IMG/VR virus record: IMGVR_UViG_3300017971_000185
Coordinates: 433,195-497,194 of that record
Reading direction: 5' to 3' (one strand)
Length of the DNA: 64,000 bases
This document shows positions 36,852-63,466 of this stretch, one piece after another (within the stretch, counting starts at the first letter, position 1; every line of letters begins with the position of its first letter). The position numbers and the translations under genes were made by a program. The notes under the pieces were generated by a model, which was given only the letters and a program-made list of their open reading frames with translations, was not told the DNA's origin and made no database searches.

Positions 36852-37724
36852 ATGACGGTTGACAACGCAGTCAAACAGCGCATCATCAGCGACTACATCA
36901 AGACCGCTGCTGGGCGTCACAAGCTGGCCGCGTCCATGACGCAGCCTCTCCGCACGCGGCGTGACTACACGTCTGTGGGTCGGCGCACGTTCCTCGTGGA
37001 GCAACTCCCCGATGGCGCACTGCCGATCTACGACAAGGATCCCGATGTCACGGCGTATGTCGTCGGCGAGGAAGGCGAGAACATTCTCGCTGTCACCAAG
37101 CCGCGGCGCGTGGTGTTCCCACTCTTCGAGATCGCGAGCTTGCCCGAGATCCCGCTGACCCAGATCAAGGAGCGGCGCTTCGACCTGATCGAGCGTGCGC
37201 AAGATCTGGCGAGGGCTCAGATCCAAGCCGCGGAGGACGAGAGGGTGTTCGCCATCCTCGACGCTATCGCCACTGTTGGATTCGACTCGCTTCCGGGCCA
37301 GTTGAACCCCGACGTGCCGGTGGTCGCTCCCATTTCTGGTGCCGTCCTGGCCGACGCATTCAGTCTCATCGAGCGTCACGACCTTCGGGTTGCTCGTGTG
37401 TACATGAATGCGCGCGACTATGCCGACATCAGGAAGTTTGGTCGGGACATCTTGGATATCGAGAGTCAGCGCGACTTGCTGAAGACCGGTCTCCAGGCAA
37501 CCCTGTGGGGCGCGCAGATCATCACCAGCCGGCTCGTTCCGGTTGGCACGGTCTATGTGTGCTGCGAGCCCGAGTTGTTCGGACGCATCCCGGTGCGTAC
37601 AGAACTCACGGTCCTCTCGGCCGACGACCCCCGCGCCCGCACCATCGGGTTCTCAGTTTTTGAGAATCTCGGAATCGGTGCCTACAACCCGCGTGGGCTC
37701 ACTCGACTGTCTGTCACCCGCTAG
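36852..37724 (+). CDS. Major capsid protein (HK97/encapsulin-like fold)
   Basis: GGAGG RBS; 290 aa; VEQLPDGALPIYDKD, FPLFEIAS.PEI, RAQIQAAED; strongly biased codons; followed by a terminator. Confidence 0.82.
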   Translation: MTVDNAVKQRIISDYIKTAAGRHKLAASMTQPLRTRRDYTSVGRRTFLVEQLPDGALPIYDKDPDVTAYVVGEEGENILAVTKPRRVVFPLFEIASLPEIPLTQIKERRFDLIERAQDLARAQIQAAEDERVFAILDAIATVGFDSLPGQLNPDVPVVAPISGAVLADAFSLIERHDLRVARVYMNARDYADIRKFGRDILDIESQRDLLKTGLQATLWGAQIITSRLVPVGTVYVCCEPELFGRIPVRTELTVLSADDPRARTIGFSVFENLGIGAYNPRGLTRLSVTR

Positions 37725-37826: not shown

Positions 37827-38810
37827 ATGCGTGCCATCCCGTGTCCTATTTCTCCACAGGAGCTTGAACAGCTTTATCGAGTAGAGAAACTCACTGACGA
37901 GCAGATTGTCGAACGCATCGGTGAGGAGGCGACGGTCAAGCGTGTTCGATCGTGGCGTAAGCGGTTTGGCATTCGCACGCTTCATCGATGGGAGCGTTAC
38001 GATGTGCCGCTGATTGAGGGGCGACTCAAGTCTTTGCTAGTTGGCTCAATGCTCGGTGATGGGAGGCTCGTTTACAGGACGCACGCAACCCACTACACGG
38101 AGAACCATGAGGAGGCTCAGAAGGCTTATCTTGAGTGGAAAGTCGCTCAATGGGGGTCGTCCTGGGTGCGTACGGAGCCCAAGCCCAGTGTCAAGAAGAA
38201 GGATGGGAAAACCTACCGTTCATGGCGATTCAACACGGTCGCCCATGCGATTCTGAATGATTGGCAAGCGCTTTTCTACGAACGGCGTGATCGCGGCTGG
38301 AAGCGTCTTGTCTCTGAGATCGTGGATCATGTAGACGAATTCGCGCTGGCCATCTGGTACCTCGATGATGGTTCTGCGGGATGGTGGCCTGACATCATAT
38401 TCGGTGCGGATGGGGAAAGCCGCAAGGTTGCGTGGGCCATCTTTGAAAAGTTCGGTCTCAAACCTCGGTGGCGGTTGGCGAAAGAGATGGCGGGTCGGGA
38501 GACAGGTACCTTTCACATGGAACGCGAAGACACTGCCGAGAAATTTCTCAACATTATCACACCACATGTCCCGGTCTGCATGGCGTGGAAACTCAGGGGT
38601 TTCGGTTACAACAGCGGTCGAAACAACATCATCAAGGGCAAGCTCGATTCCGAGGTCTTACGGGAGTTTGCGGCCGAGGGAATTCCAATTCGGCGCATAG
38701 CAAAGATTCTTGGGGTTGGTAGCTCCACGGTGGATCGCTATCTTCGGAAAAATGGGATCGAGCATCCCCGGACCAAGGGGAATCCAAACCATCGGAGAAC
38801 CCATGTCTAG
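37827..38810 (+). CDS. LAGLIDADG homing endonuclease with terminal HTH
   Basis: LVGSMLGDG and LAIWYLDDG; C-terminal IRRIAKILGVGSSTVDRYLRKNGI. Confidence 0.85.
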   Translation: MRAIPCPISPQELEQLYRVEKLTDEQIVERIGEEATVKRVRSWRKRFGIRTLHRWERYDVPLIEGRLKSLLVGSMLGDGRLVYRTHATHYTENHEEAQKAYLEWKVAQWGSSWVRTEPKPSVKKKDGKTYRSWRFNTVAHAILNDWQALFYERRDRGWKRLVSEIVDHVDEFALAIWYLDDGSAGWWPDIIFGADGESRKVAWAIFEKFGLKPRWRLAKEMAGRETGTFHMEREDTAEKFLNIITPHVPVCMAWKLRGFGYNSGRNNIIKGKLDSEVLREFAAEGIPIRRIAKILGVGSSTVDRYLRKNGIEHPRTKGNPNHRRTHV

Positions 38811-45234: not shown

Positions 45235-45413
45235 ATGTCATGAAATCGACACCTAAGTGGTTGATTGTCTTGGCTATCGCATTGGTGGGACTGGTGGGGC
45301 TCATTGGCGACTGGGGGCTCGCGATTCATTTTGGGTTGCACATGATGTTGGCGGTTGTGGTCGTGATTGGGTTAGGTCTTGTGTGCCTGGACATCAGGAA
45401 GGGAGATAGGTGA
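45231..45413 (+). CDS. Small membrane protein
   Basis: Two hydrophobic segments in 60 aa. Confidence 0.5.
   Translation: MNVMKSTPKWLIVLAIALVGLVGLIGDWGLAIHFGLHMMLAVVVVIGLGLVCLDIRKGDR
45367..45392 (+). repeat. 26-nt direct repeat, copy 1 (copy 2 at 46521-46546)
   Basis: TTGGGTTAGGTCTTGTGTGCCTGGAC is identical at both sites. Confidence 0.85.
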
Positions 45414-45832
45414 TGCAGAAGCCATGTGCTGACGCGGGAGTCGGTTCGGAGAAACAGGCCGGCACGAGCTGGCGCGGCCGTCATTTCCTGACGGGGATGC
45501 CGCTGGAGGGCACGCTCTACCCGGACTTCCCGTCGCTCCTCGCGGCGTTGAGGTCGCTCTCCGTGGAGGTGTTTTCGCACGACTACCCGTCGCAGGATCC
45601 CGACGAGAGGTCCTTCGGGTTCGAGGAGGTGAGAGAGGGCTGGGAATCCGTGCTCCATCTTGTGCCCGTCGCCGCTCTCCGCGGAGAGGAGACGACGGGG
45701 CGCTTCAGGCCCGAGGCCGTTGAGGCCGACCCCACGGTTGACGGGCTGGAGTTTCTGATGGGGACGCCGGAGGGTCGGAGTCGCGTCGCGAAGATTCTCA
45801 ATCGGGACAAGAGGGGTAGACTGACGGTATGA
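45410..45832 (+). CDS. Hypothetical protein ending in an MCP-N-arm-like motif
   Basis: LEFLMGTPEGRSRVA versus MCP YIKTAAGRHKLA. Confidence 0.45.
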   Translation: MMQKPCADAGVGSEKQAGTSWRGRHFLTGMPLEGTLYPDFPSLLAALRSLSVEVFSHDYPSQDPDERSFGFEEVREGWESVLHLVPVAALRGEETTGRFRPEAVEADPTVDGLEFLMGTPEGRSRVAKILNRDKRGRLTV

Positions 45833-49563: not shown

Positions 49564-50532
49564 ATGAAAACACCAAGTCTCAAGAGACTCGATTGGATGG
49601 CTTTCTTCGAATCGGAGTTGGGCATCTGCAATGGAGACCCGGACAATCCGGGTTATCCGAGGATGACGGAGGACGGCTATCTGGTGATCAGCGGTCCTTT
49701 CCTGAATCGTCTGGGACGCAATCAGTACGAGCGCATGGTGGAGACGGGCGAGCTGCCCGCAAAGGGGAATGCGATCCACATTCAGCGTGGAGCCCGGCTT
49801 GCTAACGTTGCTGAGGAAGCCATTGCTGCGGCTGATCCCAAGGAAGCCGGGAAGATCTTGGAGGATGCCCGTAGTAAGCGCGACAAAGAGGCTGAGGAGG
49901 GGAAGAAAAAGACAAGAGCCCGGTCGAGTGTCAAGTATCCAGAGGAGAAGGTTCACGATGCGCTGACTCGCACGTTCATCGATGACGCGATGTACGGATC
50001 GGTCTTGACGAGCACAGTTTACACAGCCCCTTCCATTCACGGCGCCGTCACTACGCGTATGGGCATGTCTCTTCATCCTGTGGAGCTACACAACATGACC
50101 AACACGCGCATGGCGTCTGATAGTGATGCGGTGGACCGTTCTCGCGACTTCGCGCGCTCTAAACCGGTTCGCTACGCGCTCATTCGCACTGTGGGAACCT
50201 TTGATGCTTTTCGGGCTGAGAAGAACCATGTCGATGCTGAGCGTCTCAAGGATTTCTTTGCCGTCTATCTGACGATGTGCGACAACGCGACATCGAATGC
50301 GCGCGGAACCTTCGGCCTTCGGGAGTTGATTGTGGTCAAGCACAAGAGCCCCACAGGCAGCATGAGTCTGATCGATTTCAAGGATCGGCTCAAGGTGCGT
50401 ATGCGGAATGGGGAGTGCCCGCGCTCGTTTGCCGACATCGAGCTTGGCTATGATGACAAGAACCTCCCTCCGGGGGCTGAGATCATCCGACTGGCTGAGC
50501 TACGGGGGAACTTGGATTGGCTGGTTAGCTGA
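49564..50532 (+). CDS. cas7: Type I-C Cas7 (Csd2), divergent
   Basis: CNGDPDNPGYPRMTEDG, FIDDAMYGSV, GAVTTRMGMSLHPV..TNTR. Confidence 0.85.
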   Translation: MKTPSLKRLDWMAFFESELGICNGDPDNPGYPRMTEDGYLVISGPFLNRLGRNQYERMVETGELPAKGNAIHIQRGARLANVAEEAIAAADPKEAGKILEDARSKRDKEAEEGKKKTRARSSVKYPEEKVHDALTRTFIDDAMYGSVLTSTVYTAPSIHGAVTTRMGMSLHPVELHNMTNTRMASDSDAVDRSRDFARSKPVRYALIRTVGTFDAFRAEKNHVDAERLKDFFAVYLTMCDNATSNARGTFGLRELIVVKHKSPTGSMSLIDFKDRLKVRMRNGECPRSFADIELGYDDKNLPPGAEIIRLAELRGNLDWLVS

Positions 50533-51197
50533 TGCCAAGTGTTTACTTTCAGGGCGACTTCGCCCACTTTTCCAACCCGCTGCTGAAGGCCGAGGGGACT
50601 ACCTTTCCCGGCCCTCCGCCTTCGGCTCTCCGCGGAGCCATTGAAAACATCCTGTTCAAGATGGGCGTCTACGTGGATGTCCGCCGCATCACGTACCACC
50701 GGCCGATTCGGACGATGAACTTCAAGACGAACGGCCTCAAACATGCGGTAGGCATGTCGCAGATCACGCTCCCGGATGCCCATCAGATGAACAACACGTT
50801 GCTCTACGACGTGGCCTATACAGTGGACTTCGATCTGCGCTTGTGTTGGCGTGACCGAGAGACCCAAGAGATCGTTAAGTTCGATGAGAGGGTGCTGGAG
50901 AGCCAGGATCTTCGGAAGTACATGGCGATGTACGAGAAGTATATCCGCCTGGGTAAGTGTCAGCACCCGCCTTGGCTGGGGTCGAAATTCTGCGAAGCTC
51001 TGTTCAGGGCACCCCGGCCCGAGGACACGCCGATTCAGGAGTCGCGGGACTTGGGGATGATGACGCACGGCATCGAGTACCGTAAGGCGGGGAACATCAC
51101 CCATGTCTTTCATCCGGTGATGAGAGACGGGGTTGTAGAGGTGGACTCGTTCTTCGATGTTCTCAAGGCCCGCTACGGGTTGAGGGCGGGTCAATGA
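50532..51197 (+). CDS. cas5: Type I-C Cas5 (Cas5c/Cas5d)
   Basis: GDFAHFSNP..PPPSALRGAIENI, LLYDVAY, PPWLG, DLGMM, PVMRDGVVEV. Confidence 0.88.
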   Translation: MPSVYFQGDFAHFSNPLLKAEGTTFPGPPPSALRGAIENILFKMGVYVDVRRITYHRPIRTMNFKTNGLKHAVGMSQITLPDAHQMNNTLLYDVAYTVDFDLRLCWRDRETQEIVKFDERVLESQDLRKYMAMYEKYIRLGKCQHPPWLGSKFCEALFRAPRPEDTPIQESRDLGMMTHGIEYRKAGNITHVFHPVMRDGVVEVDSFFDVLKARYGLRAGQ

Positions 51198-52870
51198 TTC
51201 GTCTCGACACACTCGTTGCCTTGGGGCAACGGGAAAAACTCGGCTATCTGCTCGATGACCAGCGGCCCTATGGGGAAGTTGTGTTGGATGCGGAGGGCCA
51301 CATCATCACTGTTCGCAAATCCTCTGGGGCGGTTCCCGTCCCAGACTTGCCCAATCGCACCAACTCCGAGTTGCGCATTGGGATGTATGTCGAGAACGAG
51401 ATGTATCTCTTTGGGACGACTCCGAAGGAGTACAAGGACCCCACGAAGCCTAGGAAAGCGCTGGAGCACGCTGCTGAAGCCTATGCCAAGATCGCCAAGG
51501 AAGTGCGGATCAAAGCCACACAGGCGGTCGCGCGGTTCTACGACTTGTCTCTAAGGGGCAAGCACAAGGTGCCGAAGGGGTGGCGATTTCAGCGGTATGT
51601 GTTTGTCTATAAGGACCAATACCTGCCCAGCGTTCCGCAGCTTCGCCCTGTGATTGAGAAATTTGTAGATGCCATTCCTAGCGTGGACAGCATCGAAAGG
51701 CAGTGCTTGATTACGGGAGAGTGGGTGCGGTGTCAGACGACGCCCCACGCAAACACCAAAGGACTTAGCTCCAACTCCAGTGGAGCGTCCTTTGTGAGTT
51801 TCAATGGGACAAGTCAGTACCAGGGGCGTCCCGAGGATCGGTTCTTGACGGCTCCCATCGCCCCTGGTGTATCTCGACTCATGACTTCAGCGCTTTCGTG
51901 GTTGAGCCGGAATCGTAGAATCCAACTCACGCCCGATCTCAATGTCTTGGTCTGGACTGAGGAAGGCCACCCGCTAGAGGCTCTCGGGCCGAAGTTGTTT
52001 GCGCCAGAGAAGGAGTCCCGAGAACAGCGAACGAAACGCGAAGAGGAAGCCGTTGGTGACCTCTTCGCTCATCCTGAGTGGGATGAGAGCACGGAGGCCG
52101 CCTACCTCCTGACAACGACTGGGAATATGGGTCGCTTCGCGGTCCGTGAGTGGGAGGAAACGACTGTCGGCAGGCTCTCTGCCAATCTGAGGCGGTTCGT
52201 TCAGGACTTCACAGTCGAGATCACAGTTGGGGAAGAGGAAGTCCAAGCTCGTCACACGTCTCTCTCGCGGCTGTACGCAGCGTGGTCCGATAGGCAGGTG
52301 GTACACCGTGACATCCTTGCCCTAGCCAACATGGCGCTCAAAGGAATGCCGGTACCAGAGTGTGCGTGGCCCTCCGGTGCGCCAGAAACCATTATCCAGA
52401 AAGCCATCTTTCAAGCGTATAGGAAACGGAACATGGAGAATCCAGGAAATTTCACAGCGGACATCAGCGTAGACGGGCAGTCGAATGCTTACCGGATGGG
52501 ACGGGCTTGTGCCGTCATGGAGGACGCTCGGTACAGCGCGAACAGAGCCAACAGTCGGGGGGTGATCGCGCACAATGTGGTTGACAACCCGTCTGTTGGG
52601 TTTCACCGGGCGATGCAGTCCATCATCCACCATTTGCCCAAGCGCCCAGGCAATCAGTACGCTGAGAGTCTCAGCGTGTTCACCAGCGGGATCGAAATTC
52701 CTGATCGGTTTGCTGTTCGGGAGCAGAACGAGTTTTGGCTGGGGTATCTCTACGAGCAGGGCCGTCAAAGCTACTTGTATAGGCTGGGGCGCGATGCCAA
52801 GAGCGCCAAGAAGAGCGAGCAGGGCGCGGATGGCCAGGACGTAGACGCCAGGGCATTGCTTGATGATTGA
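51194..52870 (+). CDS. cas8c: Type I-C Cas8c (Csd1)
   Basis: CLITG..PH..KG..ASFVSFN, TSALSWL, VLVW, AYRMGR..FWLGY. Confidence 0.82.
   Translation: MIRLDTLVALGQREKLGYLLDDQRPYGEVVLDAEGHIITVRKSSGAVPVPDLPNRTNSELRIGMYVENEMYLFGTTPKEYKDPTKPRKALEHAAEAYAKIAKEVRIKATQAVARFYDLSLRGKHKVPKGWRFQRYVFVYKDQYLPSVPQLRPVIEKFVDAIPSVDSIERQCLITGEWVRCQTTPHANTKGLSSNSSGASFVSFNGTSQYQGRPEDRFLTAPIAPGVSRLMTSALSWLSRNRRIQLTPDLNVLVWTEEGHPLEALGPKLFAPEKESREQRTKREEEAVGDLFAHPEWDESTEAAYLLTTTGNMGRFAVREWEETTVGRLSANLRRFVQDFTVEITVGEEEVQARHTSLSRLYAAWSDRQVVHRDILALANMALKGMPVPECAWPSGAPETIIQKAIFQAYRKRNMENPGNFTADISVDGQSNAYRMGRACAVMEDARYSANRANSRGVIAHNVVDNPSVGFHRAMQSIIHHLPKRPGNQYAESLSVFTSGIEIPDRFAVREQNEFWLGYLYEQGRQSYLYRLGRDAKSAKKSEQGADGQDVDARALLDD
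52433..52870 (+). CDS. cas11: Putative Cas11c by internal translation of cas8c
   Basis: AGGA..CGGA RBS and in-frame ATG just before the SNAYRMGR segment, where type I-C Cas11 normally begins. Confidence 0.55.
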   Translation: MENPGNFTADISVDGQSNAYRMGRACAVMEDARYSANRANSRGVIAHNVVDNPSVGFHRAMQSIIHHLPKRPGNQYAESLSVFTSGIEIPDRFAVREQNEFWLGYLYEQGRQSYLYRLGRDAKSAKKSEQGADGQDVDARALLDD

Positions 52871-55070
52871 CGTGTGTCAATTCGTCACCGGCCTCTCCTC
52901 GGACAGAGGAGAGGCCGAATCTTCTGGCCCCGACTCTCTGTGGGAGCATCAGCAGTTTGGGTTCCTTGATGTAGTAGACCACATCCTGAATCGGAAGGAG
53001 AAGCAAGTTGGGCTGTCTGGCCAGCCAGGGTGTGGTAAGACGCGCCTTACGACGTATATTGCGGCTTACTTGGCCAAGTCTCCGGTGTCTCCTATCACTA
53101 GAGTAGTCGTTGTGGTCCCGACCCAGATCATTCGGGACCAGTACAGAGGACAGAAGTCTGTAGTCCGGTTTGGGGCTGTTGAGGACGTAGCTGGGGAGGG
53201 CCCGAACAACAAAGCTGTCATCTCGGTCCCTGACATTGACTTAGGGAAGCTGATAGACCCTATGGTGGCTGGTCCAAAATATCTCGTGGACCACGTCACA
53301 GGTGCCGGCAAGCCGAGAGTCATCCTTGCCACGACTATGGACACCTTTCGCAGAGCCCTAGATTGCATTGGCGACATGAGCCATGTGTTAGTCGTTCTCG
53401 ATGAGGCGCATCGGTTCCCTGTAGGAGAATTCAAAGCATGGGCAAAGGCCAGAGTCGCTTGTGAGGAGAAGAGTGCCACTATCCTTGCCACGACGGCTAC
53501 GATGTACCGAGCGGACGGGCTTCCGATTTGTCCTGGTGCGTACATACACCAAATTCCCCGGATCAAACTGATTGAGGCTGGCCTCTGCCCAAGTCGCTTT
53601 CCTGTAAAGGTTGTTCTCCTTCCCTCCGTCGCTAAGACAGCGACGGAGGTAGTGGATGTCCGTGTGAAAGGGGAAGGAACGGAAGGAACCCTTGTAGAGC
53701 TTCTGACCGATGACGATCTCCGTTTTGGGGTGCGGCATTGGGTTGGTCTGGGATGCCCGTTTGGCCTCATGCGATGCCAAACCCAGGCGTTGACCAAGCG
53801 CTTGAAAGAAATTGTCGAGGAGGAGTGTCCCCACCTGAAGGCTGAGGAGGTGGGGCGCCCCGTTGTGGATCTTTCGGGCAAAGAGGTAGACAAGATGTGG
53901 CCCGTTGTGGATCTTTCGGGTTCCAAGGTGAACAAGGCGTTGGAGGCCCAGATTGCGCATGATGGCCGTGTGCGGCATGCCAATGAGATACGGACACAGC
54001 TAGTTGTGGGCATTCGACGTGTTGAGTGTGGTTTCGACTGGCCTCCGGTATCTCATGTCTTCAACTTCGGGCTCATTTCGTCTGAGACCCTCCTGGCCCA
54101 GCTTCGAGGACGGGGTTGGCGTTCGAAGACGAGATACGAGGGCTACCCTGAGCGGTTTCGGGATGAGGCGTGGCTCATCATGTTTGTGCCGACTGTGTCA
54201 GAGGAAGCTCGAACGGAGTTTCTGAGGAGCCCTGATCATCTCAAGCTGTTGATGATCATCGCGGCGACCACGGTCAATGAAGAGGCAGGTACTCTGCTGT
54301 CGTTCATCCATGATGAGATCCAGAAGGGGTTGTCGCGGTATGTGCGTGGGTACCGGGACCAGTTGCAGGTCATCCGTATCCTGGGGGCCCTCAACCCTGA
54401 GCCCAGAGAGATGGACGAAATACGGGCTGATCTTGGAAAGATCGAGACTCGGCTCGGAGGCGATGTGTCCGTTTCGGACTACATCAGAGAGATTGTCTTA
54501 GAGTCGCGGGACGAGAAGAAGCGTGGGGTCGTGAAGAGAAAGTGGTCGAGACGACGGAAGCTCGGAGCCCTGATTCTTTTGTTGGGGCAGAAGGGTCAGT
54601 CCAAGAAAGAGACCGCGCGGCTGATTCGGGAGCTTCTGGACAAGAAGAAATCGGTTACGCTCGTGGAGAGTCCTGAGCAGGTTTCAGATGAGGTTCGCTC
54701 CGTGCTTGCAGATGCTCTCAATCAGTTGGTTGAGAAGCATGGCGACATTGTTACCTTCACGGACACATACGAGGAGATGGCGGCCACCATGAACACCGAT
54801 GTGGACACTATCCGTCGCATGCAGCGAGAGGTGGACCGTCTGACACAATTCAAGCCTCGCAGCTATCAGGTTGCTGTTGAGGCTGTTAGCCAAGAGTTGG
54901 TTCACTGCGGAAGGCGGTGGAAGGTTCTCCAGGACCTTTCCGGGCCTCTTGGCTTGGACCCAGGGACCTACACAATGCGTCATCTCGATCGCGATCTACG
55001 ACATCAGGTGTTGAAAGGCCAGCCAGAGGACATCAACAGTTTGAGAGACTTGAGGCATGCGTTTCGGTAA
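52860..55070 (+). CDS. SF2 (DEAH) helicase without HD nuclease domain
   Basis: LWEHQ, GQPGCGKT, LDEAH, TAT, VECGFDWP, QLRGRGWR; motif I starts ~50 aa from the N-terminus. Confidence 0.8.
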   Translation: MMIDVCQFVTGLSSDRGEAESSGPDSLWEHQQFGFLDVVDHILNRKEKQVGLSGQPGCGKTRLTTYIAAYLAKSPVSPITRVVVVVPTQIIRDQYRGQKSVVRFGAVEDVAGEGPNNKAVISVPDIDLGKLIDPMVAGPKYLVDHVTGAGKPRVILATTMDTFRRALDCIGDMSHVLVVLDEAHRFPVGEFKAWAKARVACEEKSATILATTATMYRADGLPICPGAYIHQIPRIKLIEAGLCPSRFPVKVVLLPSVAKTATEVVDVRVKGEGTEGTLVELLTDDDLRFGVRHWVGLGCPFGLMRCQTQALTKRLKEIVEEECPHLKAEEVGRPVVDLSGKEVDKMWPVVDLSGSKVNKALEAQIAHDGRVRHANEIRTQLVVGIRRVECGFDWPPVSHVFNFGLISSETLLAQLRGRGWRSKTRYEGYPERFRDEAWLIMFVPTVSEEARTEFLRSPDHLKLLMIIAATTVNEEAGTLLSFIHDEIQKGLSRYVRGYRDQLQVIRILGALNPEPREMDEIRADLGKIETRLGGDVSVSDYIREIVLESRDEKKRGVVKRKWSRRRKLGALILLLGQKGQSKKETARLIRELLDKKKSVTLVESPEQVSDEVRSVLADALNQLVEKHGDIVTFTDTYEEMAATMNTDVDTIRRMQREVDRLTQFKPRSYQVAVEAVSQELVHCGRRWKVLQDLSGPLGLDPGTYTMRHLDRDLRHQVLKGQPEDINSLRDLRHAFR

Positions 55071-55689
55071 GGCCAAGGAAGTTTCGCGGGAGAACAATCT
55101 CCTTCACGTGATGAACAGCTATTTGCTGTTCTCGGGCGGCAAGATGCGAGTCGATTGGCTGGAGGTGCCGGGCGAAGGCTCTCCGATGGTGAGAATCCTT
55201 CGATCCTATCTCGTACCGGGCGTGTCCAAGCTCGTTTGTTTGGATCGTAACGCCGAGTACGTCCGGGAGGGCGAGGAGCAATACGGGAGTGAGATCTGCG
55301 AGTGGGTTTTGGCCGATGACTTGTTTGCCGAGCTAGCTAATTCACCGGACAAGTACGCTAACGTAGGGGTTCTGAATGTCGATCTCTACAACAGCCTTCG
55401 TCTGCTCGAATTCCCCGAACAGATGCGGATCGTCATGGAGTTTGCCACACGCCAGTTCTGGGCGATCGGGGCCTTCATGGTGTTTCTGAACTACTCGATG
55501 CGAGGCAGTGTTCGCGAGGAGTTTGCTCAAGACGTGATCAAGACTCTGGAGCCTTATCTAGATTTGTCACAGGTTGATCTCACTGATGAGGGCTACCTGT
55601 ACAAAGGAGGAACGCCTGACCAACCAGGCAACCGGAGATTGAATCTTCGGATACACCTAGGACCAACAAGGACACCGAACAATGAGTAA
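55057..55689 (+). CDS. Putative class I SAM-dependent methyltransferase-like protein
   Basis: Rossmann-like order WLEVPGEGS (motif I), LVCLDRN (acidic end of beta2), VLNVDLY, VFLNYS. Confidence 0.45.
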   Translation: MRFGKAKEVSRENNLLHVMNSYLLFSGGKMRVDWLEVPGEGSPMVRILRSYLVPGVSKLVCLDRNAEYVREGEEQYGSEICEWVLADDLFAELANSPDKYANVGVLNVDLYNSLRLLEFPEQMRIVMEFATRQFWAIGAFMVFLNYSMRGSVREEFAQDVIKTLEPYLDLSQVDLTDEGYLYKGGTPDQPGNRRLNLRIHLGPTRTPNNE

Positions 55690-56020
55690 GAAGAACGATG
55701 ATCTGGAGGCGGTTCGTGTGATCGCTGATGCGCTTGAACCGTTTGATGATGTCGTCAGGGAGCGTATTCTGAAATGGGCATGTGAGCGGGTCGGGATGCA
55801 CCCCAAGGAGATCAAGATCATACATGAGACACAAACTGCCTATTCGGAAGACGGTGGGGGTGGGAAGAGCCCCGCCGAGAAGGCAGCCAGGACCAGGAAG
55901 GCCAATGCTGAGAAGCGCTCTGAGGCCGCCAGGAAAGCGAACAAGACCAGGGGGAAGAAGGGGCGATCCGAGGCCGCAAAGAAGGCAGCGGCTACGCGTC
56001 GTGCTTGTCAGGCTGCCTAG
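55682..56020 (+). CDS. Small protein with basic histone-H1-like AxKAxxTR repeats
   Basis: AEKAARTRK, EAARKANKTRG, EAAKKAAATRR. Confidence 0.65.
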   Translation: MSKKNDDLEAVRVIADALEPFDDVVRERILKWACERVGMHPKEIKIIHETQTAYSEDGGGGKSPAEKAARTRKANAEKRSEAARKANKTRGKKGRSEAAKKAAATRRACQAA

Positions 56021-56026
56021 AGGCAG

Positions 56027-56076
56027 AAAAGCACGCTACGGGTCGCGTGAGCGCCTCCTAGTTTTGCGTGCCTTTT
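56027..56076 (+). terminator. Hairpin closing the cas operon
   Basis: AAAAGCACGC..GCGTGCCTTTT inverted repeat after the last stop. Confidence 0.45.
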
Positions 56077-56229
56077 CCTGAGGTTTCCTTCTGCGGGGCG
56101 ATTGCGAGTACAACGAGCTTTCTGACATTCGCAGAGTAGAACACGTCAGCGCTGTTCAGGCGCGCGATTTCACCCCTCGTGCATAACCTGCGATTACGAG
56201 CAATGATTTCAGCAGGTTCTAAGCCAAGG

Positions 56230-56558
56230 GTTTCCGCCCTGTTACGGGGCGGTTGCGATTACAAGGAAGAGCCGCTGGACCTGAGCGCAGCCACCAAGCT
56301 GTTTCCGCCCTGTTACGGGGCGGTTGCGATTACAAGAGCCGTGAACGAGCAGGAATGCGCCCAAATCCTGGCCGAGTTTCCGCCCTGTTACGGGGCGGTT
56401 GCGATTACAAGGCCATGAGCTTGGCGCTCATTGATTCGAGGGCCGCTGCGTTTCCGCCCTGTTACGGGGCGGTTGCGATTACAAGATCGAGATTCTGCGG
56501 TGGACACGCGCCAGCATGTTGAGTTTCCGCCCTGTTACGGGGCGGTTGCGATTACAAG
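56230..56558 (+). CRISPR. Block A: 5 identical 36-nt repeats
   Basis: GTTTCCGCCCTGTTACGGGGCGGTTGCGATTACAAG at 56230, 56301, 56376, 56450, 56523; spacers 35, 39, 38, 37 nt. Confidence 0.97.
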
Positions 56559-56592
56559 GATTGCACGGCCTACGAGGGGTTTCCGCTCTCTC

Positions 56593-56836
56593 TTCCGTCT
56601 CCGGCCTCGAATCGAGGAGGCGGTTTCGATTGCAACGCACGCGGATGCGAAACTCCGTCTTCTCCAAGTCTGTCTCCGCGGGAGGCGGTTTCGATTGCAA
56701 CATGTCGTGCGTCGAGACATCCAGAGTGGGTTCCGTCTCCGCGGGGAGGCGTTTCGATTGCAACACCAACGGCGGTCAGGGAGTTGGAGCATGGGATTGC
56801 GTTCCGTCTCCGCGGGGAGACGGTTTCGATTGCAGT
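56593..56836 (+). CRISPR. Block B1: 4 variant repeats
   Basis: Consensus GTTCCGTCTCCGCGGGGAG(G/A)CGGTTTCGATTGCAAC at about 56593, 56668, 56730, 56801. Confidence 0.85.
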
Positions 56837-56863
56837 ATGTTGGTGGTGGAATCCTCGCCGAGT

Positions 56864-56893
56864 AGAGCCCCCTCAAACGAGGGGGCTCTTTTT
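56864..56893 (+). terminator. Intrinsic terminator inside the array
   Basis: AGAGCCCCCTC-AAAC-GAGGGGGCTCT (11-bp stem) followed by TTTT. Confidence 0.85.
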
Positions 56894-56939
56894 CCCAGTC
56901 TTCGATTACAACTACGCCATTCGGCCCCAAGGCGATCTC

Positions 56940-57345
56940 GTTTCCGCCCTCCTGCGGAGCGGTTGCGATTACAACGCTCTCACCGGCCTCAGTGTTCTCT
57001 ACTCCTTCTGGTTTCCGCTCCTCTGCGGAGCGGTTGCGATTACAACTACCGGACCGACAGCTACACCAATCTGATCAGAAAATCGAGCACCGTCGCATCG
57101 GACAGTGGTTTCCGCTCCTCTGCGGAGCGGTTGCGATTACAACTAATCGGTTTCCACCGCCGAGGGAGAACCCCGCACGTTTCCGCCCTCCTGCGGGGCG
57201 GTTGCGGTTACAACGTGACGGTCACAGGTCGAATTTCGTCTGCCCGGTCCGCCCTCCTGCGGGGCGGTTGCGATTACAACGCTACCGAGAGATCGCGGAA
57301 CGGTTGGGTGTTTCCGCCCTCCTGCGGGGCGGTTGCGATTACAAC
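56940..57345 (+). CRISPR. Block C: 6 repeats
   Basis: GTTTCCGC(C/T)C..TGCGG(G/A)GCGGTTGCGATTACAAC at 56940, 57011, 57108, 57179, 57247, 57310. Confidence 0.93.
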
Positions 57346-57376
57346 CTGCACGCTCAGCCGCCCACGAGGGTACGAG

Positions 57377-57841
57377 GTTCGTCTCCGAGGGAGACGGTTT
57401 CGATTGCAACCAGATGTGGGATGCAGTGTCCGTGTCCGCCTCTCACGGAGGCGGTTTCGATTGCAATTTCGTTGGCTCTCACTGATCGGTTTTTCGTGTT
57501 CCGTCTCCGAGGAGGCGGTTTCGATTGCAACCCCACTGACCTCAGCGCCATACGACGGTTCCGTTCCGTCTCCGAGGAGACGGTTTCGATTGCAACCTCC
57601 ACCCACGTCGTGTAGGTGCCGCCCCGTAGAGGGGCGGTTTCGATTATAACACGCGGGACTCGGGAAGAAGTTGAACCCGGATCGTTGGGTCCGCCCTTTT
57701 GGGCGGTTTCGATTACAACAATCAAGGTGGTACGTCATTTCGGGAGAGGGAGCGATTGCGATTACAACCGCATGATGTCCTGGATGGGCTTGATCGTTGA
57801 GGTTTCCGCTCTCTGCGCTACGGAGGGCGGTTGCGATCAAC
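57377..57841 (+). CRISPR. Block B2 plus hybrid/degenerate repeats
   Basis: B-type at 57377, 57434, 57498, 57563; hybrids at 57616, 57689; degenerate at about 57746 and 57802. Confidence 0.85.
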
Positions 57842-58016: not shown

Positions 58017-58526
58017 ATGCGTCGTCGTGAGATACTGACTGGTTTGGCTCTGGCCCCTTGTGTGGGCCTCCTGCCCTCCATCGCGAGAGGGTCCGAGGGG
58101 TTGAGCATTCCTGAGAAGCAAAGGCGCATTGCCAAACTCCTTAAGAGTCCTGAGGGGCGCCGTAGGCTGACTGCGAGCATGACTCACCCTCGACGTTGTG
58201 GGGGATTGGGCTATTCCACGGTGCCGCAGGGGCGACCGTTCCGTCCCGGTTACGAGTTTGTCCGAGGGGACCTGGCCCTGTTCACCGCGGGAGGGCCCGT
58301 CGAGTCGGTGACGTACACCTTGGTGGGTCCGTTGTCGTCCAAATGGAAATACGGTTACGCGATCGGCCCGGTGGATCGCGTTCCGGTCAACCCGGCACCG
58401 GGGGAGTACTACCCTGCGCTTCATGTTCCTTTGAGCGCGTTGCCGGGCGAGTACCAGATCCGATGGAAGGTGCGTTTGGAGAATGGCGAGGTTCGGGATC
58501 CCGTTCAGCCGTTTTGGGTAGGATAG
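58017..58526 (+). CDS. Protein with Tat-like N-terminus and MCP N-arm homology
   Basis: MRRREILTGLALAP; KQRRIAKLLKSPEGRRRLTASMTHP is 13/25 identical to MCP residues 8-32. Confidence 0.65.
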   Translation: MRRREILTGLALAPCVGLLPSIARGSEGLSIPEKQRRIAKLLKSPEGRRRLTASMTHPRRCGGLGYSTVPQGRPFRPGYEFVRGDLALFTAGGPVESVTYTLVGPLSSKWKYGYAIGPVDRVPVNPAPGEYYPALHVPLSALPGEYQIRWKVRLENGEVRDPVQPFWVG

Positions 58527-59898: not shown

Positions 59899-59979
59899 GG
59901 GGCTAATATACGCCCTTTGCTTGGATTTGGGGTATAGTCCTGTGAGGGCGACGATCCATCGCCTGACCTCCAAAGGCTC

Positions 59980-60092
59980 ACCCGCGCGGAGTCTGGGACG
60001 GAGGTAAAGGGGCTGCCGGACCTCGGGTCACGTCCTACGAATCTCTGACCGGCGAAGAAGTCGGAGCGCGGGTCCGCTTCGGAGCTAGCGGA
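59980..60092 (+). ncRNA. Candidate structured 5' leader RNA
   Basis: ACCCGCGC/GCGCGGGT closing helix, internal CCGGC/GTCGG stem, competing TCCGCT/AGCGGA hairpin near the RBS. Confidence 0.25.
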
Positions 60093-60103
60093 GATACGAG
60101 GAA

Positions 60104-61216
60104 GTGACCAAGGAAAGCAAATTCAAGCAACGCGTGCGTGATCGTATGGAGAGGACGGGCGAATCCTACGCTACTGCTCGACGCAACGAGAATGAGGCTG
60201 CGGGTTTGATCGAGGAGATGAAGGCAGTGGATGCTGAGCTTAGTGAGCTAGAGAAAGCTCAGCTAGAGCGCGAGAAGGTCAATCGTCAGTGGGTGAAGGA
60301 CAACCCAGGGCTCAAGGTTGTGACGCTGACGTTGACGCATAACGAGCACGGGACGCCGACGATTCACGTGTCGGGTCCTGAGCTTACGTCCATCCAGATC
60401 ACCCAGCCGCCTGACGTATACGTGGAAGCCATCCGACAGGCGTACCAGGACAACGAGTGGGCGAAGAACCCGAAGGACGATCTTGGTGATCTTCCCGAGT
60501 GTCGTTTGGAGGACTCCAAGCGCAAAGAGGACTTTGTCTACGAAAGCGGACCCGCGCCCGAGGGCACGATTCATGAGGACTTTGATGCGTTGGTGGCGGC
60601 GCTGTACAAGGTGAAGGGCCGTGTCATGTCTGTGGATCATCCGAACCATGGGCTTGTCGGGTTTGTGGAAACCGAGACGGACAAGTACCACTGGATACGG
60701 ATCAAGCCGACTCTTGCCTGGACTGAAACGGTCGCTTGGGAACATCTAGAGCTTTGGGGCCTGATGCAGACGCCGCGAGGGCGTTGCAAGGCCGCGGGTC
60801 TTTTCAGCCAGGAAGAGATGCTGGCGAAGGTGTCGTCGGCTCTAGAGGGCTGGTGGAAGAGTGCCTCTCCGTTTCCGACCAATCCTGATCCTGCGGAGAT
60901 CGTTGCTCCGCTTTCTGGAGAAGCGTTGGCTGATGTGTTTGCTCACGTCGAGAAATTCGATGTTTCGGTTGAGGCGATTGTGATGTCGGCGCGCAGTTTC
61001 CATGAGGTTTGTAAGCACGCAAGCGACAGCATCCGCTTGGAAACTCGTGCCCGGCTGATGAAGAAAGGGCTAATGGGTCGCCTGTGGGATGCTCTCGTGA
61101 TCACGACCCGAGAGATCGATGAGGATGAGATATGTTTCTTGGGTCGGGATCCCGAGGGGAAGTGGGTGTGTCACTCGCTTCGTGTGATTCGGCCATCTGC
61201 GCAGGGTTCAGAGTGA
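60104..61216 (+). CDS. Protein with C-terminal partial MCP paralog
   Basis: N-terminal KFKQRVRDRMERTGESYATARR; 60902-61111 is 28/70 identical, ungapped, to MCP 37323-37532. Confidence 0.8.
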   Translation: MTKESKFKQRVRDRMERTGESYATARRNENEAAGLIEEMKAVDAELSELEKAQLEREKVNRQWVKDNPGLKVVTLTLTHNEHGTPTIHVSGPELTSIQITQPPDVYVEAIRQAYQDNEWAKNPKDDLGDLPECRLEDSKRKEDFVYESGPAPEGTIHEDFDALVAALYKVKGRVMSVDHPNHGLVGFVETETDKYHWIRIKPTLAWTETVAWEHLELWGLMQTPRGRCKAAGLFSQEEMLAKVSSALEGWWKSASPFPTNPDPAEIVAPLSGEALADVFAHVEKFDVSVEAIVMSARSFHEVCKHASDSIRLETRARLMKKGLMGRLWDALVITTREIDEDEICFLGRDPEGKWVCHSLRVIRPSAQGSE

Positions 61217-63466
61217 CCTTCCGTGTTTTCGGAAGGCGATCCCGAGATTCCTTGCCCTGAGCTTGTCGTCTGCCCAGCACAGCCTGCATTCGCTACACGT
61301 CAACCCGGACAAGGTCTGCGCCGGGCAAGGGGCCAGCGACCAACCCGTCCCAGGTACCTGGAATACCTGACCGTCGGGAGATAGAGCAGGCACAATGACG
61401 GCAGGCGCGTACCCCATTGACACGACCCTCTTGATGTCTTCCACCGTGTCACAGGAGCCAAGGACGCTCGCCCGCCGAAACGCGGCGCGTGGGATCCACG
61501 CTGCCGAGTGAGTGTACGTCCACAGAGCCGTTCCCCTGTTCGCCAACCACCAGTCCGCGAGCCCAGCAACCATTTTTGCCTGACCGACCGTCGTCACGTC
61601 TCCACCACCATCGTGTAGACATAAGGCGAGCCCTTGGGGATCGGGAAATTTCTCCTTCGCAAGTTTGGCCTCAGCCGCGATAATTTCGTCGGCCGTCCAG
61701 TTTCCGTCTTTCGCTATTCGCTCAAGCCGCTTTGAGTTGCAAGGGTGTGCGTAGCATCCGTTGTCGCGCAGGGGGCAACTTGGCGGGCATGTTTGTTTGA
61801 TGGGAATCGAGGTTGAGATGATTTGAGAGATCGGCTTGGAGCCTCGGATCGGTGCATGTATTGCGACGGGTGGTTGGCGCGTTTTTGAAGAGATCCCGTG
61901 TTTGCGGAGATGGCAGATCACAGTTGATGGGGACACTTCCAGAGCTTGAGCGATGGTTTGATTGGTTGCTCCCTCTGCTACCATCTGTCGAAGAACATCC
62001 GCATCGAGGGGCTTGGGTTTCGGCCGCTCGATCCCATGTTTGCGGAGATGGTACGCCACAGTTGATGGGGACACTTCCAGAGCCCGAGCGATGGTCCGAT
62101 TGGTTGCTCCCTCTGCCACCATTTGTCGAAGAACATCCGCATCGAGCTTTCGAGCGGTGGTTTGGTTGGGTTTCTCTGCCACAACCTTCCGCTCGATCCC
62201 GTGTTTGCGGAGATGGTACGCCACAGTTGATGGGGACACTTTCAGAGCCCGCGCGATGGCCTGATCGGTTGCTCCCTCTGCTACCATCTGTTGAAGAACG
62301 TCCGCATCGAGAGTTTTCTGTTTCGGCCGCTCGATCCCGTGTTTGCGGAGATGGTACGCCACAGTTGATGGGGACACTTTCAGAGCCCGCGCGATGGCCT
62401 GATCGGTTGCTCCCTCCATCGTCATTTGTCGAAGAACATCCGCATCGAGGGGCTTGGGTTTTGGCCGCTTGATCCCGTGCTTGTGGAGATGGTACGCCAC
62501 AGTCGAGATAGACACTTTCAGAGCCCGAGCGATGGTCCGATTGGTTGCTCCCTCCATCACCATTTGTCGAAGAACATTCGCTTCTATGGTGGTTTTGCAG
62601 CGCTGCGATGGTGGAGGGGCGGCCTTCCAAAGCTCCTGTTGCCATTCGGAGAAACTGTCGAAATCGCGTCCGTTAGTGTAAGCCCATCGTTTGAGGAGAC
62701 GGCTGCGTTTGGGTTCGGGCGTCTTGCACCAAGCGATGTAATTCAGCAGCCATCGAAAGTTGGTCAGGGTTTTCGGAATCTCTGCGGGAAACCTTCGTGG
62801 GAAGATTTGTCGGAGGATTCTCTGAAGAGTCTCTTGTTTCCAGGCTCTAGTCTCGATCTGGAAAGGCGCGTACCACCCTGCCTTTTTTCCAGCAGACATC
62901 CAGGCTTGGATTTGAGCCTTGGTCTGGTCGGCCGATGCGTATTCTCTGCGGTACGATTTAGAGAAAAAATGCTTTCCGTCCGGCAGGCTTTCCAGCAAGC
63001 GTTTCTGTTTCGGTTCGATTTTTCCGAGAACGTATCGCCTGCGCCATGTTTCTAGCCACCATTTCCACTTTTTCTGGGAGCGTAGTTCCCAAAGAGATTG
63101 AGACTTTGTTAGGTGCTTGAGTCGGGTGATCCTGTCAAGCCATCGGGCGTGTGGGTATTTGCCGTCATTGTGGACTCGGTTGTTCCAGGTCCACCCGTCT
63201 AAGCTCTCAAGCAGCCGTATGCGATCTTGTGTTAGCTCTCCGTTGCGGTACATTCGGCGCTGATAAGCTATCCATTTCCCTATTGGTCGTCCGTCTCTTC
63301 GATCCGTGTAGCGGATTTGGTCGGCGCCACCACGTTCTTCCGATTCGGCAAGCACTTCGTAGTACGTCCCCATCCACTGGGCTGTCGAAAACGGTTGTGA
63401 TCGCTTCCGCCATCTTCGAAGGTCCCTCATCCAGTCTTTTTCGACGCACTGATCTCGGCTTGGCAT
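61208..63466 (-). CDS. Fusion: helicase-associated (HA)-like repeats + 5 HTH repeats + Cys-rich gp88-like domain
   Basis: IGKWIAYQRRMY..RIRLLESLDGWTW; 5x LDADVLRQM..HLRKHGI; TCPPSCPL..GCYA, LHDGGGD, WTYTH, CPAQT..CSECRLC. Confidence 0.75.
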   Translation of the reverse strand: MPSRDQCVEKDWMRDLRRWRKRSQPFSTAQWMGTYYEVLAESEERGGADQIRYTDRRDGRPIGKWIAYQRRMYRNGELTQDRIRLLESLDGWTWNNRVHNDGKYPHARWLDRITRLKHLTKSQSLWELRSQKKWKWWLETWRRRYVLGKIEPKQKRLLESLPDGKHFFSKSYRREYASADQTKAQIQAWMSAGKKAGWYAPFQIETRAWKQETLQRILRQIFPRRFPAEIPKTLTNFRWLLNYIAWCKTPEPKRSRLLKRWAYTNGRDFDSFSEWQQELWKAAPPPSQRCKTTIEANVLRQMVMEGATNRTIARALKVSISTVAYHLHKHGIKRPKPKPLDADVLRQMTMEGATDQAIARALKVSPSTVAYHLRKHGIERPKQKTLDADVLQQMVAEGATDQAIARALKVSPSTVAYHLRKHGIERKVVAEKPNQTTARKLDADVLRQMVAEGATNRTIARALEVSPSTVAYHLRKHGIERPKPKPLDADVLRQMVAEGATNQTIAQALEVSPSTVICHLRKHGISSKTRQPPVAIHAPIRGSKPISQIISTSIPIKQTCPPSCPLRDNGCYAHPCNSKRLERIAKDGNWTADEIIAAEAKLAKEKFPDPQGLALCLHDGGGDVTTVGQAKMVAGLADWWLANRGTALWTYTHSAAWIPRAAFRRASVLGSCDTVEDIKRVVSMGYAPAVIVPALSPDGQVFQVPGTGWSLAPCPAQTLSGLTCSECRLCWADDKLRARNLGIAFRKHGRSL
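61884..62587 (-). repeat. Five tandem HTH-coding repeats (period 138 nt, one 165 nt)
   Basis: Near-identical units, e.g. CATCCGCATCGAG recurring at about 61997, 62135, 62299, 62437. Confidence 0.92.

What the first reader, a model, noticed from the sequence alone, without database searches (positions are those of the whole stretch)
60104..61216. Truncated major-capsid paralog fused to an unrelated N-terminus
Seen: 40% ungapped identity over 70 aa to the MCP C-terminal half, plus an N-arm-like LMQTPRGRCKA at 60761, but the central MCP region is missing; it lies 23 kb from the head genes. Inference: a capsid-docking fusion, a dominant-negative inhibitor of relatives' capsid assembly, or a decoy for MCP-triggered immunity. 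With the 58017 and 45410 ORFs it suggests systematic reuse of capsid pieces.
Basis: partly seen in the sequence, partly recalled or inferred. Interest (0 to 1): 0.7.

Follow-up and report, generated by a model that had tools for sequence, protein, structure and literature searches.

The report
Stand-alone capsid A-domain fusion protein
A 497-kb phage carries an extra gene whose last third is a clean cut-out of only the central (A) domain of its capsid protein, joined to three unrelated modules. It belongs to a large family of phage capsid-domain proteins for which my searches found no description, and its role (most likely mimicking or binding free capsid protein) is untested.

Summary
The core observation holds. 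ORF 60104-61216 (370 aa) ends in a 136-aa segment homologous to the phage's own major capsid protein (MCP, window 36852-37724): 33% identity over 104 aa, E 4e-17, and 28/70 identical ungapped. AlphaFold2 models this segment at pLDDT above 90. All 50 best PDB matches are HK97-fold capsid or encapsulin chains. It is a precise A-domain: N-arm, E-loop and P-domain are absent.

The "N-arm-like" LMQTPRGRCKA is not capsid-derived. It is a conserved motif of an unrelated module that also occurs in the 45410 ORF.

The N-terminal 234 aa comprise three modules that occur elsewhere with other partners. An ortholog at 56% identity keeps all four modules (dN/dS about 0.4), so this is a real gene.

About 75 sequence clusters of small A-domain-only phage proteins exist in metagenomes. 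They are patchy in occurrence, evolve fast, lie outside head modules and, where checked, are lone-strand genes. They stay MCP-like on the two main A-domain helices, while the MCP itself is 83-90% conserved among close relatives.

Best reading (inferred, about 0.35): an accessory MCP mimic that competes for factors binding the free MCP A-domain face, such as host sensors. MCP capping or poisoning, an oligomerisation module, and a structural role remain open. Expression could not be tested.

The parts
60104..61216 (+). The gene: 370-aa four-module protein (P0001), GTG start. It is a lone + strand gene between two - strand genes.
   Evidence: ortholog P0006 has the same architecture; an identical copy lies in a 372-kb IMG/VR contig
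59925..60103 (+). Conserved upstream leader or promoter element of about 170 nt, shared with the upstream region of a second module-A gene at genome 3069-3240 and with two places on the ortholog's contig
   Evidence: no Rfam family; no sigma-70-like site
60104..60238 (+). Module A (aa 1-45): two-helix N-terminal motif KFKxRVR..TGESY
   Evidence: 12 sequences in the profile; a second copy in the genome lies in the ORF at genome 3091-5262; helices 3-18 and 22-42, pLDDT 88-97
60269..60517 (+). Module B (aa 56-138): beta-beta-beta-alpha domain ..NEHGTPT..DDLGDLPxC. In other metagenomic proteins it stands at the C-terminus or is followed by other domains (for example Multi_ubiq).
   Evidence: pLDDT 94-96; lowest dN/dS, 0.20
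60518..60805 (+). Module C (aa 139-234): beta-alpha-beta-beta-beta unit ending in LMxTPxGR.
   Evidence: paralog is the 45410 ORF; weak likeness to one half of a glyoxalase/VOC fold, Z about 5; the N-arm likeness is at chance level
60806..61213 (+). Module D (aa 235-370): end of the spine helix, the HK97 A-domain and the last strand (..LRVIR), with the P-domain hairpin deleted
   Evidence: BLASTP E 4e-17 to the MCP; phrog_2522 positions 190-264; pLDDT above 90; all top-50 PDB matches are HK97 fold, Z up to 10.0; the A-domain profile hits phage G gp27 residues 153-237, E 1.1e-22
36852..37724 (+). Major capsid protein (290 aa), the family from which module D derives; phage G gp27-like
   Evidence: profile against 6WKK E 4.7e-85; 83-90% identical to the 24 IMG/VR MCPs aligned
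45410..45832 (+). 140-aa ORF, a paralog of module C (not a capsid piece)
   Evidence: BLASTP 28% over 134 aa, E 5e-6; module-C profile E 2.6e-5
58017..58526 (+). 169-aa ORF with a signal-like N-terminus and a 28-aa MCP N-arm-like insert (nt 58116-58199) that its homologs lack

Best explanation
SHOWN. The gene encodes a modular accessory protein. Its C-terminal 136 aa are an excised HK97 A-domain derived from the phage-G-like MCP family. Its first 234 aa are three unrelated modules that also occur in other proteins. It is one member of a large family of phage proteins that carry only the MCP A-domain. I found no Pfam model or paper describing this family.

INFERRED. The A-domain is used as a molecular mimic of the capsomer-forming face of free MCP. 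It would be made from its own promoter, outside the head gene module. It would compete for factors that bind that face of unassembled MCP. The most likely such factors are host immune sensors of the kind shown to dock on the MCP A-domain (Avs7/8/10, Dsr1). The protein would then act as a decoy or sponge for an MCP that is too constrained to escape by mutation. The N-terminal modules A-C would add a second activity or control whose nature is unknown.
For: Fold and homology.

Real gene: the ortholog at 56% identity keeps all four modules, has only in-frame indels, and gives dN/dS 0.40 overall, 0.20 for module B and 0.44 for the A-domain.

Family: 97 hits among representative proteins. About 75 are A-domain-only proteins of 105-260 aa that start with M and often end in ..VTR. 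Two carry tandem A-domains, and one 771-aa protein has the domain at its N-terminus.

Accessory nature: only 1 of 5 large related phage records has extra A-domain copies. None of 80 MCP loci has an A-only gene within 5 kb. Cultured relatives (phage G, Tunturi_5) show only the MCP. In three further contexts the A-only gene is a lone + strand gene inside runs of - strand early or nucleotide-metabolism genes, as this one is. In two others (L006, L088) it lies among small hypothetical genes outside a head module.

Fast divergence with retained mimicry: A-only proteins have median 31% identity to each other and 38% to MCPs. In the same core segment MCPs are 87% identical to each other. The MCP-consensus residues they keep sit on the two main A-domain helices (LADAF..E and Y.DLRKFGRD) and in the beta-hinge. 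Those helices form the inter-subunit interface (PMC8346489).

[quoted passage not shown] MCPs also trigger CapRel, CBASS and Thoeris (PMC13728456).

One more weak context clue: the gene lies 2.3 kb from the phage's own type I-C CRISPR-Cas locus, and another A-only gene (P0027) lies about 1.7 kb from one.
Against: There is no functional or expression data: no RNA run was listed. No host sensor is known for this uncultured phage.

In P0001 and its nearest relatives the second helix motif has decayed (ARSFHEVCKHASDS where the MCP has ARDYADIRKFGRD). This particular member therefore mimics the MCP less well than typical family members.

A decoy that binds a sensor could trigger it rather than block it.

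Retained interface residues are equally expected if the partner is the MCP itself, or if the domain self-assembles.

The N-terminal modules have no recognisable function. The CRISPR proximity rests on two cases from related phages.
Confidence: 0.35

Rival explanations
1. MCP binder. The A-domain docks onto free MCP as a neighbouring subunit would. It would cap the interface (an escort that prevents premature assembly or hides the epitope) or poison capsomer growth (superinfection exclusion or dominant-negative against co-infecting phages).
For: The interface helices stay MCP-like. The MCP partner would be nearly invariant (83-90% identity among the MCPs aligned), which explains the conservation. 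The family is accessory and fast-evolving. The gene sits next to the phage's CRISPR-Cas locus, a system that may serve phage-phage competition.
Against: Related phages share an 83-90% identical MCP, and 87% in the A-domain core. A poison therefore could not tell self from relatives. The complex prediction gave no verdict either way. The gene is absent from most relatives, so it is not a required chaperone.
Confidence: 0.25
2. Oligomerisation module. The A-domain self-assembles into pentamer- or hexamer-like rings, as proposed for Family 4 A-domain encapsulins. It would serve only to multimerise or scaffold the N-terminal modules, with no link to the capsid or to immunity.
For: A-domains carry the main intra-capsomer contacts, and stand-alone A-domain proteins are proposed to form facets (PMC8346489). 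The domain is fused to many different N-termini and also occurs in tandem.
Against: Self-assembly alone would not require sequences to stay closer to the MCP than to each other. Self-assembly of Family 4 proteins is itself unproven: 2PK8 crystallised as a dimer. This was not tested here.
Confidence: 0.15
3. Minor structural protein. The A-domain docks the N-terminal modules onto or into the phage's own capsid.
For: Homology to the MCP. Huge phages package many extra head proteins (general knowledge).
Against: The gene lies 22 kb from the head genes, as a lone gene between opposite-strand genes. It is absent from most relatives with the same MCP. It lacks the P-domain and E-loop needed to sit in the lattice. 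Its A-domain dN/dS is 0.44 while the MCP is 83-90% conserved.
Confidence: 0.1
4. A non-functional chimera or decaying relic of an MCP duplication.
For: Other MCP pieces in the genome look like debris. One has a TGA inside the match.
Against: The frame is intact. The ortholog at 56% identity has all modules and only in-frame indels, with dN/dS 0.4. The excision follows domain boundaries precisely, and the fold is confidently modelled. Dozens of independent family members exist. The gene is identical across many metagenomes.
Confidence: 0.05

Closest known systems
Phage G gp27-type HK97-fold major capsid protein (PDB 6WKK; phrog_2522; Pfam Phage_capsid / Phage_capsid_4)
   Same: Module D is homologous in sequence to the A-domain of this MCP family and has the same fold.
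   Different: It lacks the N-arm, E-loop, most of the spine helix and the P-domain, so it cannot be a lattice subunit. It is fused to 234 aa of unrelated modules, is encoded far from the head genes, and is only 33% identical to its own MCP.
Family 4 'A-domain encapsulins' (Pfam PF08967 / DUF1884; PDB 2PK8; Andreas and Giessen 2021, PMC8346489)
   Same: Both are HK97 derivatives reduced to the A-domain of about 100 aa. Both have unknown function and a possible interaction or assembly role.
   Different: Family 4 proteins belong to cellular organisms (hyperthermophilic Euryarchaeota, Rhodothermus and Rubricoccus). They are stand-alone proteins in two-gene operons with enzymes, and their sequence likeness to MCPs is very low. 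Here the protein is phage-encoded and still plainly similar to a specific MCP family. It has no PF08967 match even at E up to 1, is fused to other modules and has no enzyme partner.
Full-length MCP paralogs with special roles (T4 gp24 vertex protein, PDB 1YUE; capsid-size-redirecting MCP homologs of phage satellites such as Ccm). The roles are from my own knowledge.
   Same: A duplicated capsid gene is put to a second use. 1YUE and a capsid-forming PICI (9GYI) are among the structural matches.
   Different: Those paralogs keep the whole HK97 fold and enter a capsid lattice. This protein keeps one domain only.
Small uncharacterised proteins of cultured jumbo phages with an A-domain-like predicted fold (BFVD: Erwinia phage Y3 125 aa, Achromobacter phage Motura 116 aa, Pseudomonas phages Noxifer 138 aa and PaBG 146 aa)
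   Same: Whole small proteins superpose on module D: TM by target 0.39-0.67, Foldseek probability 0.99-1.00. This suggests that stand-alone A-domains are a wider habit of large phages.
   Different: The likeness is structural only. tblastn with P0001 or P0027 does not find them. They are single-domain proteins. Common descent was not tested.

Membership tests
HK97-fold major capsid protein (phrog_2522 / PF05065 / PF25209) | A-domain (two helices around a beta-hinge sheet) | tested here: met
HK97-fold major capsid protein (phrog_2522 / PF05065 / PF25209) | N-arm and E-loop | tested here: not met
   No match to MCP residues 1-100. The LMQTPRGRCKA likeness is at chance level.
HK97-fold major capsid protein (phrog_2522 / PF05065 / PF25209) | P-domain (full spine helix plus beta-hairpin between the A-domain and the C-terminal strand) | tested here: not met
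   No match to MCP 235-290. About 40 residues are deleted relative to the MCP, as in the whole A-only family. Only the last turns of the spine helix remain.
HK97-fold major capsid protein (phrog_2522 / PF05065 / PF25209) | Assembles into capsomers and shells | not testable with these tools
   The complex prediction with two MCP copies gave no verdict.
Family 4 A-domain encapsulins (PF08967) | Sequence match to PF08967 / DUF1884 | tested here: not met
   P0001 has no Pfam family at E up to 1. Other A-only members have none at E up to 0.1.
Family 4 A-domain encapsulins (PF08967) | Stand-alone protein of about 100 aa consisting of the A-domain only | tested here: not met
   P0001 is a 370-aa four-module fusion. 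Many relatives of 105-170 aa come closer to this feature.
Family 4 A-domain encapsulins (PF08967) | Two-component operon downstream of an enzyme (hydrogenase, OsmC, GAPDH, DeoC), in a cellular genome | tested here: not met
   It is a phage genome. The neighbours are an unknown 136-aa ORF and a 752-aa multi-HTH protein on the other strand.
Phage A-domain-only proteins (family delineated here; no published name found) | MCP-like A-domain core with LAD.F..E, L.K.G and WGA positions, P-domain hairpin deleted, and a short C-terminal strand ending the protein | tested here: met
   P0001's nearest A-domains are P0006 and the 144-aa P0017.
Phage A-domain-only proteins (family delineated here; no published name found) | Second-helix motif ARDYADLRKFGRD kept close to the MCP | tested here: not met
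   It has decayed in P0001, P0006 and P0017.
Anti-defence decoy or sponge | Binds a host immune sensor and blocks its activation | not testable with these tools
   The host and its sensors are unknown. Only the literature precedent of sensors binding the A-domain face is available.

The most novel reading that the evidence does not exclude
Large phages with an MCP too constrained to mutate have repeatedly cut out its A-domain and express it as a separate, fast-evolving decoy. The decoy would occupy host pattern-recognition receptors (Avs7/8/10-, Dsr1- or CapRel-like) that sense the capsomer-forming face of free MCP. That would be a new anti-defence class: structural-protein domain mimics. P0001 would be a multi-module version that couples this decoy to further activities.
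Probability: 0.2. Interest if true: 0.85.

Novelty: new variant of a known kind. Interest (0 to 1): 0.6.

Why it matters
Capsid proteins are now known to be among the main molecular patterns that bacterial immunity senses. Several sensors grip exactly the A-domain face. A widespread family of phage proteins consisting of just that domain is a concrete candidate for how phages with immutable capsids answer such sensing. This family keeps the interface residues, diverges fast and sits outside the head genes. Alternatively, it may show how phages regulate or sabotage capsid assembly. Either way it defines a sizeable protein family (about 75 clusters at 50% identity) that has no Pfam model. It is also a second, independent case, after Family 4 encapsulins, of the HK97 fold being reduced to its A-domain. 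Similar small proteins in cultured jumbo phages (Erwinia Y3, Achromobacter Motura, Pseudomonas Noxifer and PaBG) could make the question testable at the bench.

Tried and rejected
- Complex prediction (two MCP copies plus the A-domain, own alignments): score 0.01, no verdict. This is evidence neither for nor against binding.
- Expression: no RNA run was listed for the gene.
- Population variation: four DNA runs are clonal, with a single T>G at 60747 (Leu to Arg), so there is no within-population signal of selection.
- N-arm idea: rejected by a shuffle test and by the conservation of the motif within module C.
- Function of the N-terminal modules: no Pfam hit and no usable protein-atlas feature hit. 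A separate model of residues 1-236 gave only weak matches: Z at most 5.3 to one half of glyoxalase/VOC folds for module C and to generic helical hairpins for module A, and AFDB clusters with TM below 0.35. One relative (P0012) has a Glyoxalase_8 N-terminal segment in place of module A. This is a lead, not a result.
- Context search with the A-domain alignment in IMG/VR: the first alignment was too diverse. The second returned only full MCPs, 80 of 80.
- PF25209 labels on some hits turned out to mark truncated full MCPs (Phage_capsid_4), not A-only proteins.
- Tree of A-domains: MCP and A-only labels cluster (3 changes against 45 in shuffles), but few branches are supported (96 columns). Single versus multiple origin stays open.
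- CRISPR spacers: no match in the loci held, and two 26-nt spacer cores hit only other assemblies of the same phage.

Full report
WHERE WE ARE. The window is the last 64 kb of a 497,194-bp IMG/VR virus record (CheckV completeness 94%). A 372-kb contig of the same phage runs from the record's end through about 1.35 kb into its start, so the genome is essentially complete and permuted or circular. The phage occurs nearly unchanged in sediment and seawater metagenomes. Its major capsid protein (MCP) is window 36852-37724, 290 aa. It matches phrog_2522 'major head protein' at E 5.9e-48. A profile of its family matches phage G gp27 (PDB 6WKK) at E 4.7e-85. The 24 IMG/VR MCPs I aligned are 83-90% identical to it, from contigs of 19 to 536 kb; four more distant representatives are 42-50% identical.

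THE OBSERVATION. ORF 60104-61216 (+) encodes 370 aa. Residues 235-338 align with MCP 127-229 at 33% identity over 104 aa with one gap, E 4e-17. PHROGs independently places residues 270-344 on positions 190-264 of the major-head-protein profile. A profile of the domain finds only two copies in the 497-kb genome: the MCP and this ORF. The 'N-arm-like' LMQTPRGRCKA does not hold up. It scores 0 to 4 against the MCP N-arm, and its best match anywhere in the MCP is reached by 14% of shuffles. The peptide is the conserved end (LMxTPxGR) of a module shared with the ortholog and with the 45410 ORF.

ANATOMY. The representative-library search splits the protein into four modules.
- Module A (aa 1-45, KFKxRVR..TGESY, two helices) recurs once more in the genome, at the head of a long ORF at genome 3091-5262. 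It is preceded there by the same conserved upstream sequence of about 170 nt.
- Module B (aa 56-138..NEHGTPT..DDLGDLPxC, three strands and a helix) occurs in about 17 other metagenomic proteins. It ends those proteins or is followed by other domains, including a Multi_ubiq domain.
- Module C (aa 139-234) has one paralog, the 45410 ORF.
- Module D (aa 235-370) is the capsid-like part.

AlphaFold2 with a 57-row alignment gives mean pLDDT 82.9, with module B at 94-96 and module D mostly 93-97. A Foldseek-independent comparison with 48,161 PDB chains returns only HK97-fold capsid proteins and encapsulins in the top 50. All cover model residues about 237-365, with Z up to 10.0; HK97, lambda, T4 gp24, phage G and several encapsulins are included.

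Alignments show what was kept: the last turns of the spine helix, the whole A-domain, and a final strand (..LRVIR) that matches the MCP's C-terminal ..LSVTR. The P-domain strands of about 40 residues that lie between them in the MCP are gone. So is everything before MCP residue 127. The deletion follows domain boundaries.

A REAL GENE. A 1.9-kb metagenomic contig encodes an ortholog (P0006) with 56% identity over 99% of the length. It has all four modules and only in-frame indels. Nei-Gojobori dN/dS is 0.40 overall, 0.20 in module B and 0.44 in the A-domain. This is one pair with substantial synonymous divergence, so it shows purifying but not strong constraint. Expression could not be tested because no RNA run was listed.

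A FAMILY. Of 97 representative proteins matching P0001, 17 match modules A and B. Of the 81 matching module D, about nine are full or fragmentary MCPs. About 75 are proteins of 105-260 aa that carry only the A-domain. They start with Met, have unrelated and mostly helical N-termini, and often end in ..VTR. Two have tandem A-domains, one of these with a module-A-like head. One 771-aa protein has the domain at its N-terminus.

None has a Pfam family. The PF25209 (Phage_capsid_4) labels belong to truncated full MCPs. The A-only profile hits phage G gp27 residues 153-237 at E 1.1e-22.

The genes are patchy. One of five large related phage records has extra copies. No A-only gene lies within 5 kb of any of 80 MCP genes. 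The cultured relatives (phage G, Tunturi_5) show only the MCP.

In three further contexts, the A-only gene is a single + strand gene inside runs of - strand genes of early or nucleotide-metabolism type. P0001 likewise sits between two - strand genes. In two others it lies among small hypothetical genes outside a head module: P0024 in a short + strand run, and P0027 about 1.7 kb from a type I-C cas operon. P0001 lies 2.3 kb past the phage's own type I-C locus and arrays.

In the shared core, A-only proteins are less like each other (median 31%) than like MCPs (38%), while MCPs are 87% alike. On a poorly resolved tree the two labels need three changes against 45 for shuffled labels. The MCP-consensus residues that A-only proteins retain lie on the two main helices (LADAF..E and Y.DLRKFGRD) and in the beta-hinge (L.K.G, WGA). 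Andreas and Giessen describe those helices as the main inter-subunit interface of a facet (PMC8346489). P0001 keeps the first helix and the hinge, but its second-helix motif has decayed.

HOW IT MOST LIKELY WORKS.

Shown: this is an accessory, separately transcribed, modular protein whose C-terminus is a stand-alone capsid A-domain.

Inferred: the domain acts through the surface that free MCP uses to form capsomers. Three partners are conceivable: host factors that read that surface, the MCP itself, or other copies of the domain.

I rank the mimic or decoy reading first (about 0.35), for four reasons.
- The family looks like conflict genes: patchy, moron-like, fast-evolving and shuffled.
- The MCP is so conserved that escape by mutation seems closed.
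- My literature searches found no such decoy described.

The MCP-binding reading (cap, escort or poison) explains the retained interface equally well. A poison aimed at relatives, however, could not spare an 83-90% identical self MCP, and a required chaperone would not be absent from most relatives.

A pure oligomerisation role, as hypothesised for Family 4 encapsulins, is possible. It does not explain why members stay closer to the MCP than to each other.

A structural docking role fits the location, patchiness and missing lattice elements least.

A dead relic is contradicted by the ortholog and by the family.

The complex prediction gave no verdict and is not used as evidence.

COMPARISON WITH WHAT IS KNOWN. 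The domain's source is the phage-G-type MCP. The nearest described concept is the Family 4 'A-domain encapsulin' (PF08967). Those proteins are cellular, mostly archaeal, partnered with enzymes and barely similar to MCPs in sequence. P0001 fails the sequence, architecture and context criteria for that family.

Full-length MCP paralogs such as T4 gp24, and satellite capsid homologs, reuse the whole fold. BFVD contains small uncharacterised proteins of cultured jumbo phages (Erwinia Y3, Achromobacter Motura, Pseudomonas Noxifer and PaBG) that superpose on module D with TM up to 0.67 by target. This hints that stand-alone A-domains are a wider feature of large phages and offers bench systems. Common descent was not tested.

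VERDICT. I rate it a new variant of a known kind: an HK97 fold reduced to its A-domain, here phage-borne, MCP-proximal and fused to other modules. The mechanism is unproven. Interest 0.6.

Noticed in passing
window 49564-57600: A phage-encoded type I-C CRISPR-Cas system: cas7 (49564-50532), cas5d (50532-51197), cas8c/csd1 (51194-52870) and a ResIII/DEAD helicase (52860-55070). It is followed by arrays at 56230-57596 with three repeat variants and spacers of 29-44 nt. Two 26-nt spacer cores matched only other assemblies of the same phage in IMG/VR.
   Followed up: partly
window 37827-38810: A LAGLIDADG homing endonuclease with a C-terminal HTH lies directly downstream of the MCP gene.
   Followed up: no
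window 36852-37724 and loci L008-L087: The phage-G-like MCP is 83-90% identical between this phage and the 24 IMG/VR MCPs aligned, from contigs of 19 to 536 kb. That is unusually strong conservation for a capsid protein.
   Followed up: partly
L002 1408-1680 (genome about 313.9 kb) and L004 1423-1785 (genome about 288.3 kb): Two more MCP pieces lie elsewhere in the genome. One is a 90-aa ORF with a twin-arginine-like signal followed by MCP residues 7-64 (52% identity), and the match runs on past a TGA stop. The other is a 120-aa ORF containing an E-loop-like stretch (MCP 69-92, 67% identity).
   Followed up: partly
window 58017-58526: A 169-aa ORF with a signal-like N-terminus carries a 28-aa MCP N-arm-like insert (aa 34-61, 50% identity). 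Its three metagenomic homologs lack the insert or have it much weaker. Their conserved part is the C-terminal 100 aa.
   Followed up: partly
window 59925-60103; L090 118-300; L005 about 470-560 and 1748-1917: A conserved non-coding element of about 170 nt precedes module-A genes in four places. RNAalifold proposes hairpins with a few compensatory pairs, but only four sequences are available. There is no Rfam match and no sigma-70-like promoter.
   Followed up: partly
window 61208-63466 (-): A 752-aa protein with a helicase-associated (HA) domain, five tandem GerE/HTH_38-type HTH repeats and a C-terminal DUF7227. Its stop overlaps the 3' end of the finding's gene by 9 nt, convergently.
   Followed up: no
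L007 9898-11251 versus the genome ends: A 372-kb contig of the same phage bridges the record's end to its start through about 1,354 nt that are absent from the record. The 497-kb record is therefore a nearly complete, permuted or circular genome.
   Followed up: partly
window 34451-35962 and 14281-34584: An extremely acidic 503-aa protein lies just upstream of the head genes and may be a scaffold. Five consecutive giant ORFs (1,015-1,523 aa) fill 14-34.6 kb. None of these was examined.
   Followed up: no
proteins P0007 and P0009 (metagenomic relatives of modules A and B): The same N-terminal modules are fused to a Multi_ubiq (PF14452) domain instead of a capsid A-domain. This suggests a shuffling set of C-terminal 'heads' on a common N-terminal chassis.
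   Followed up: partly
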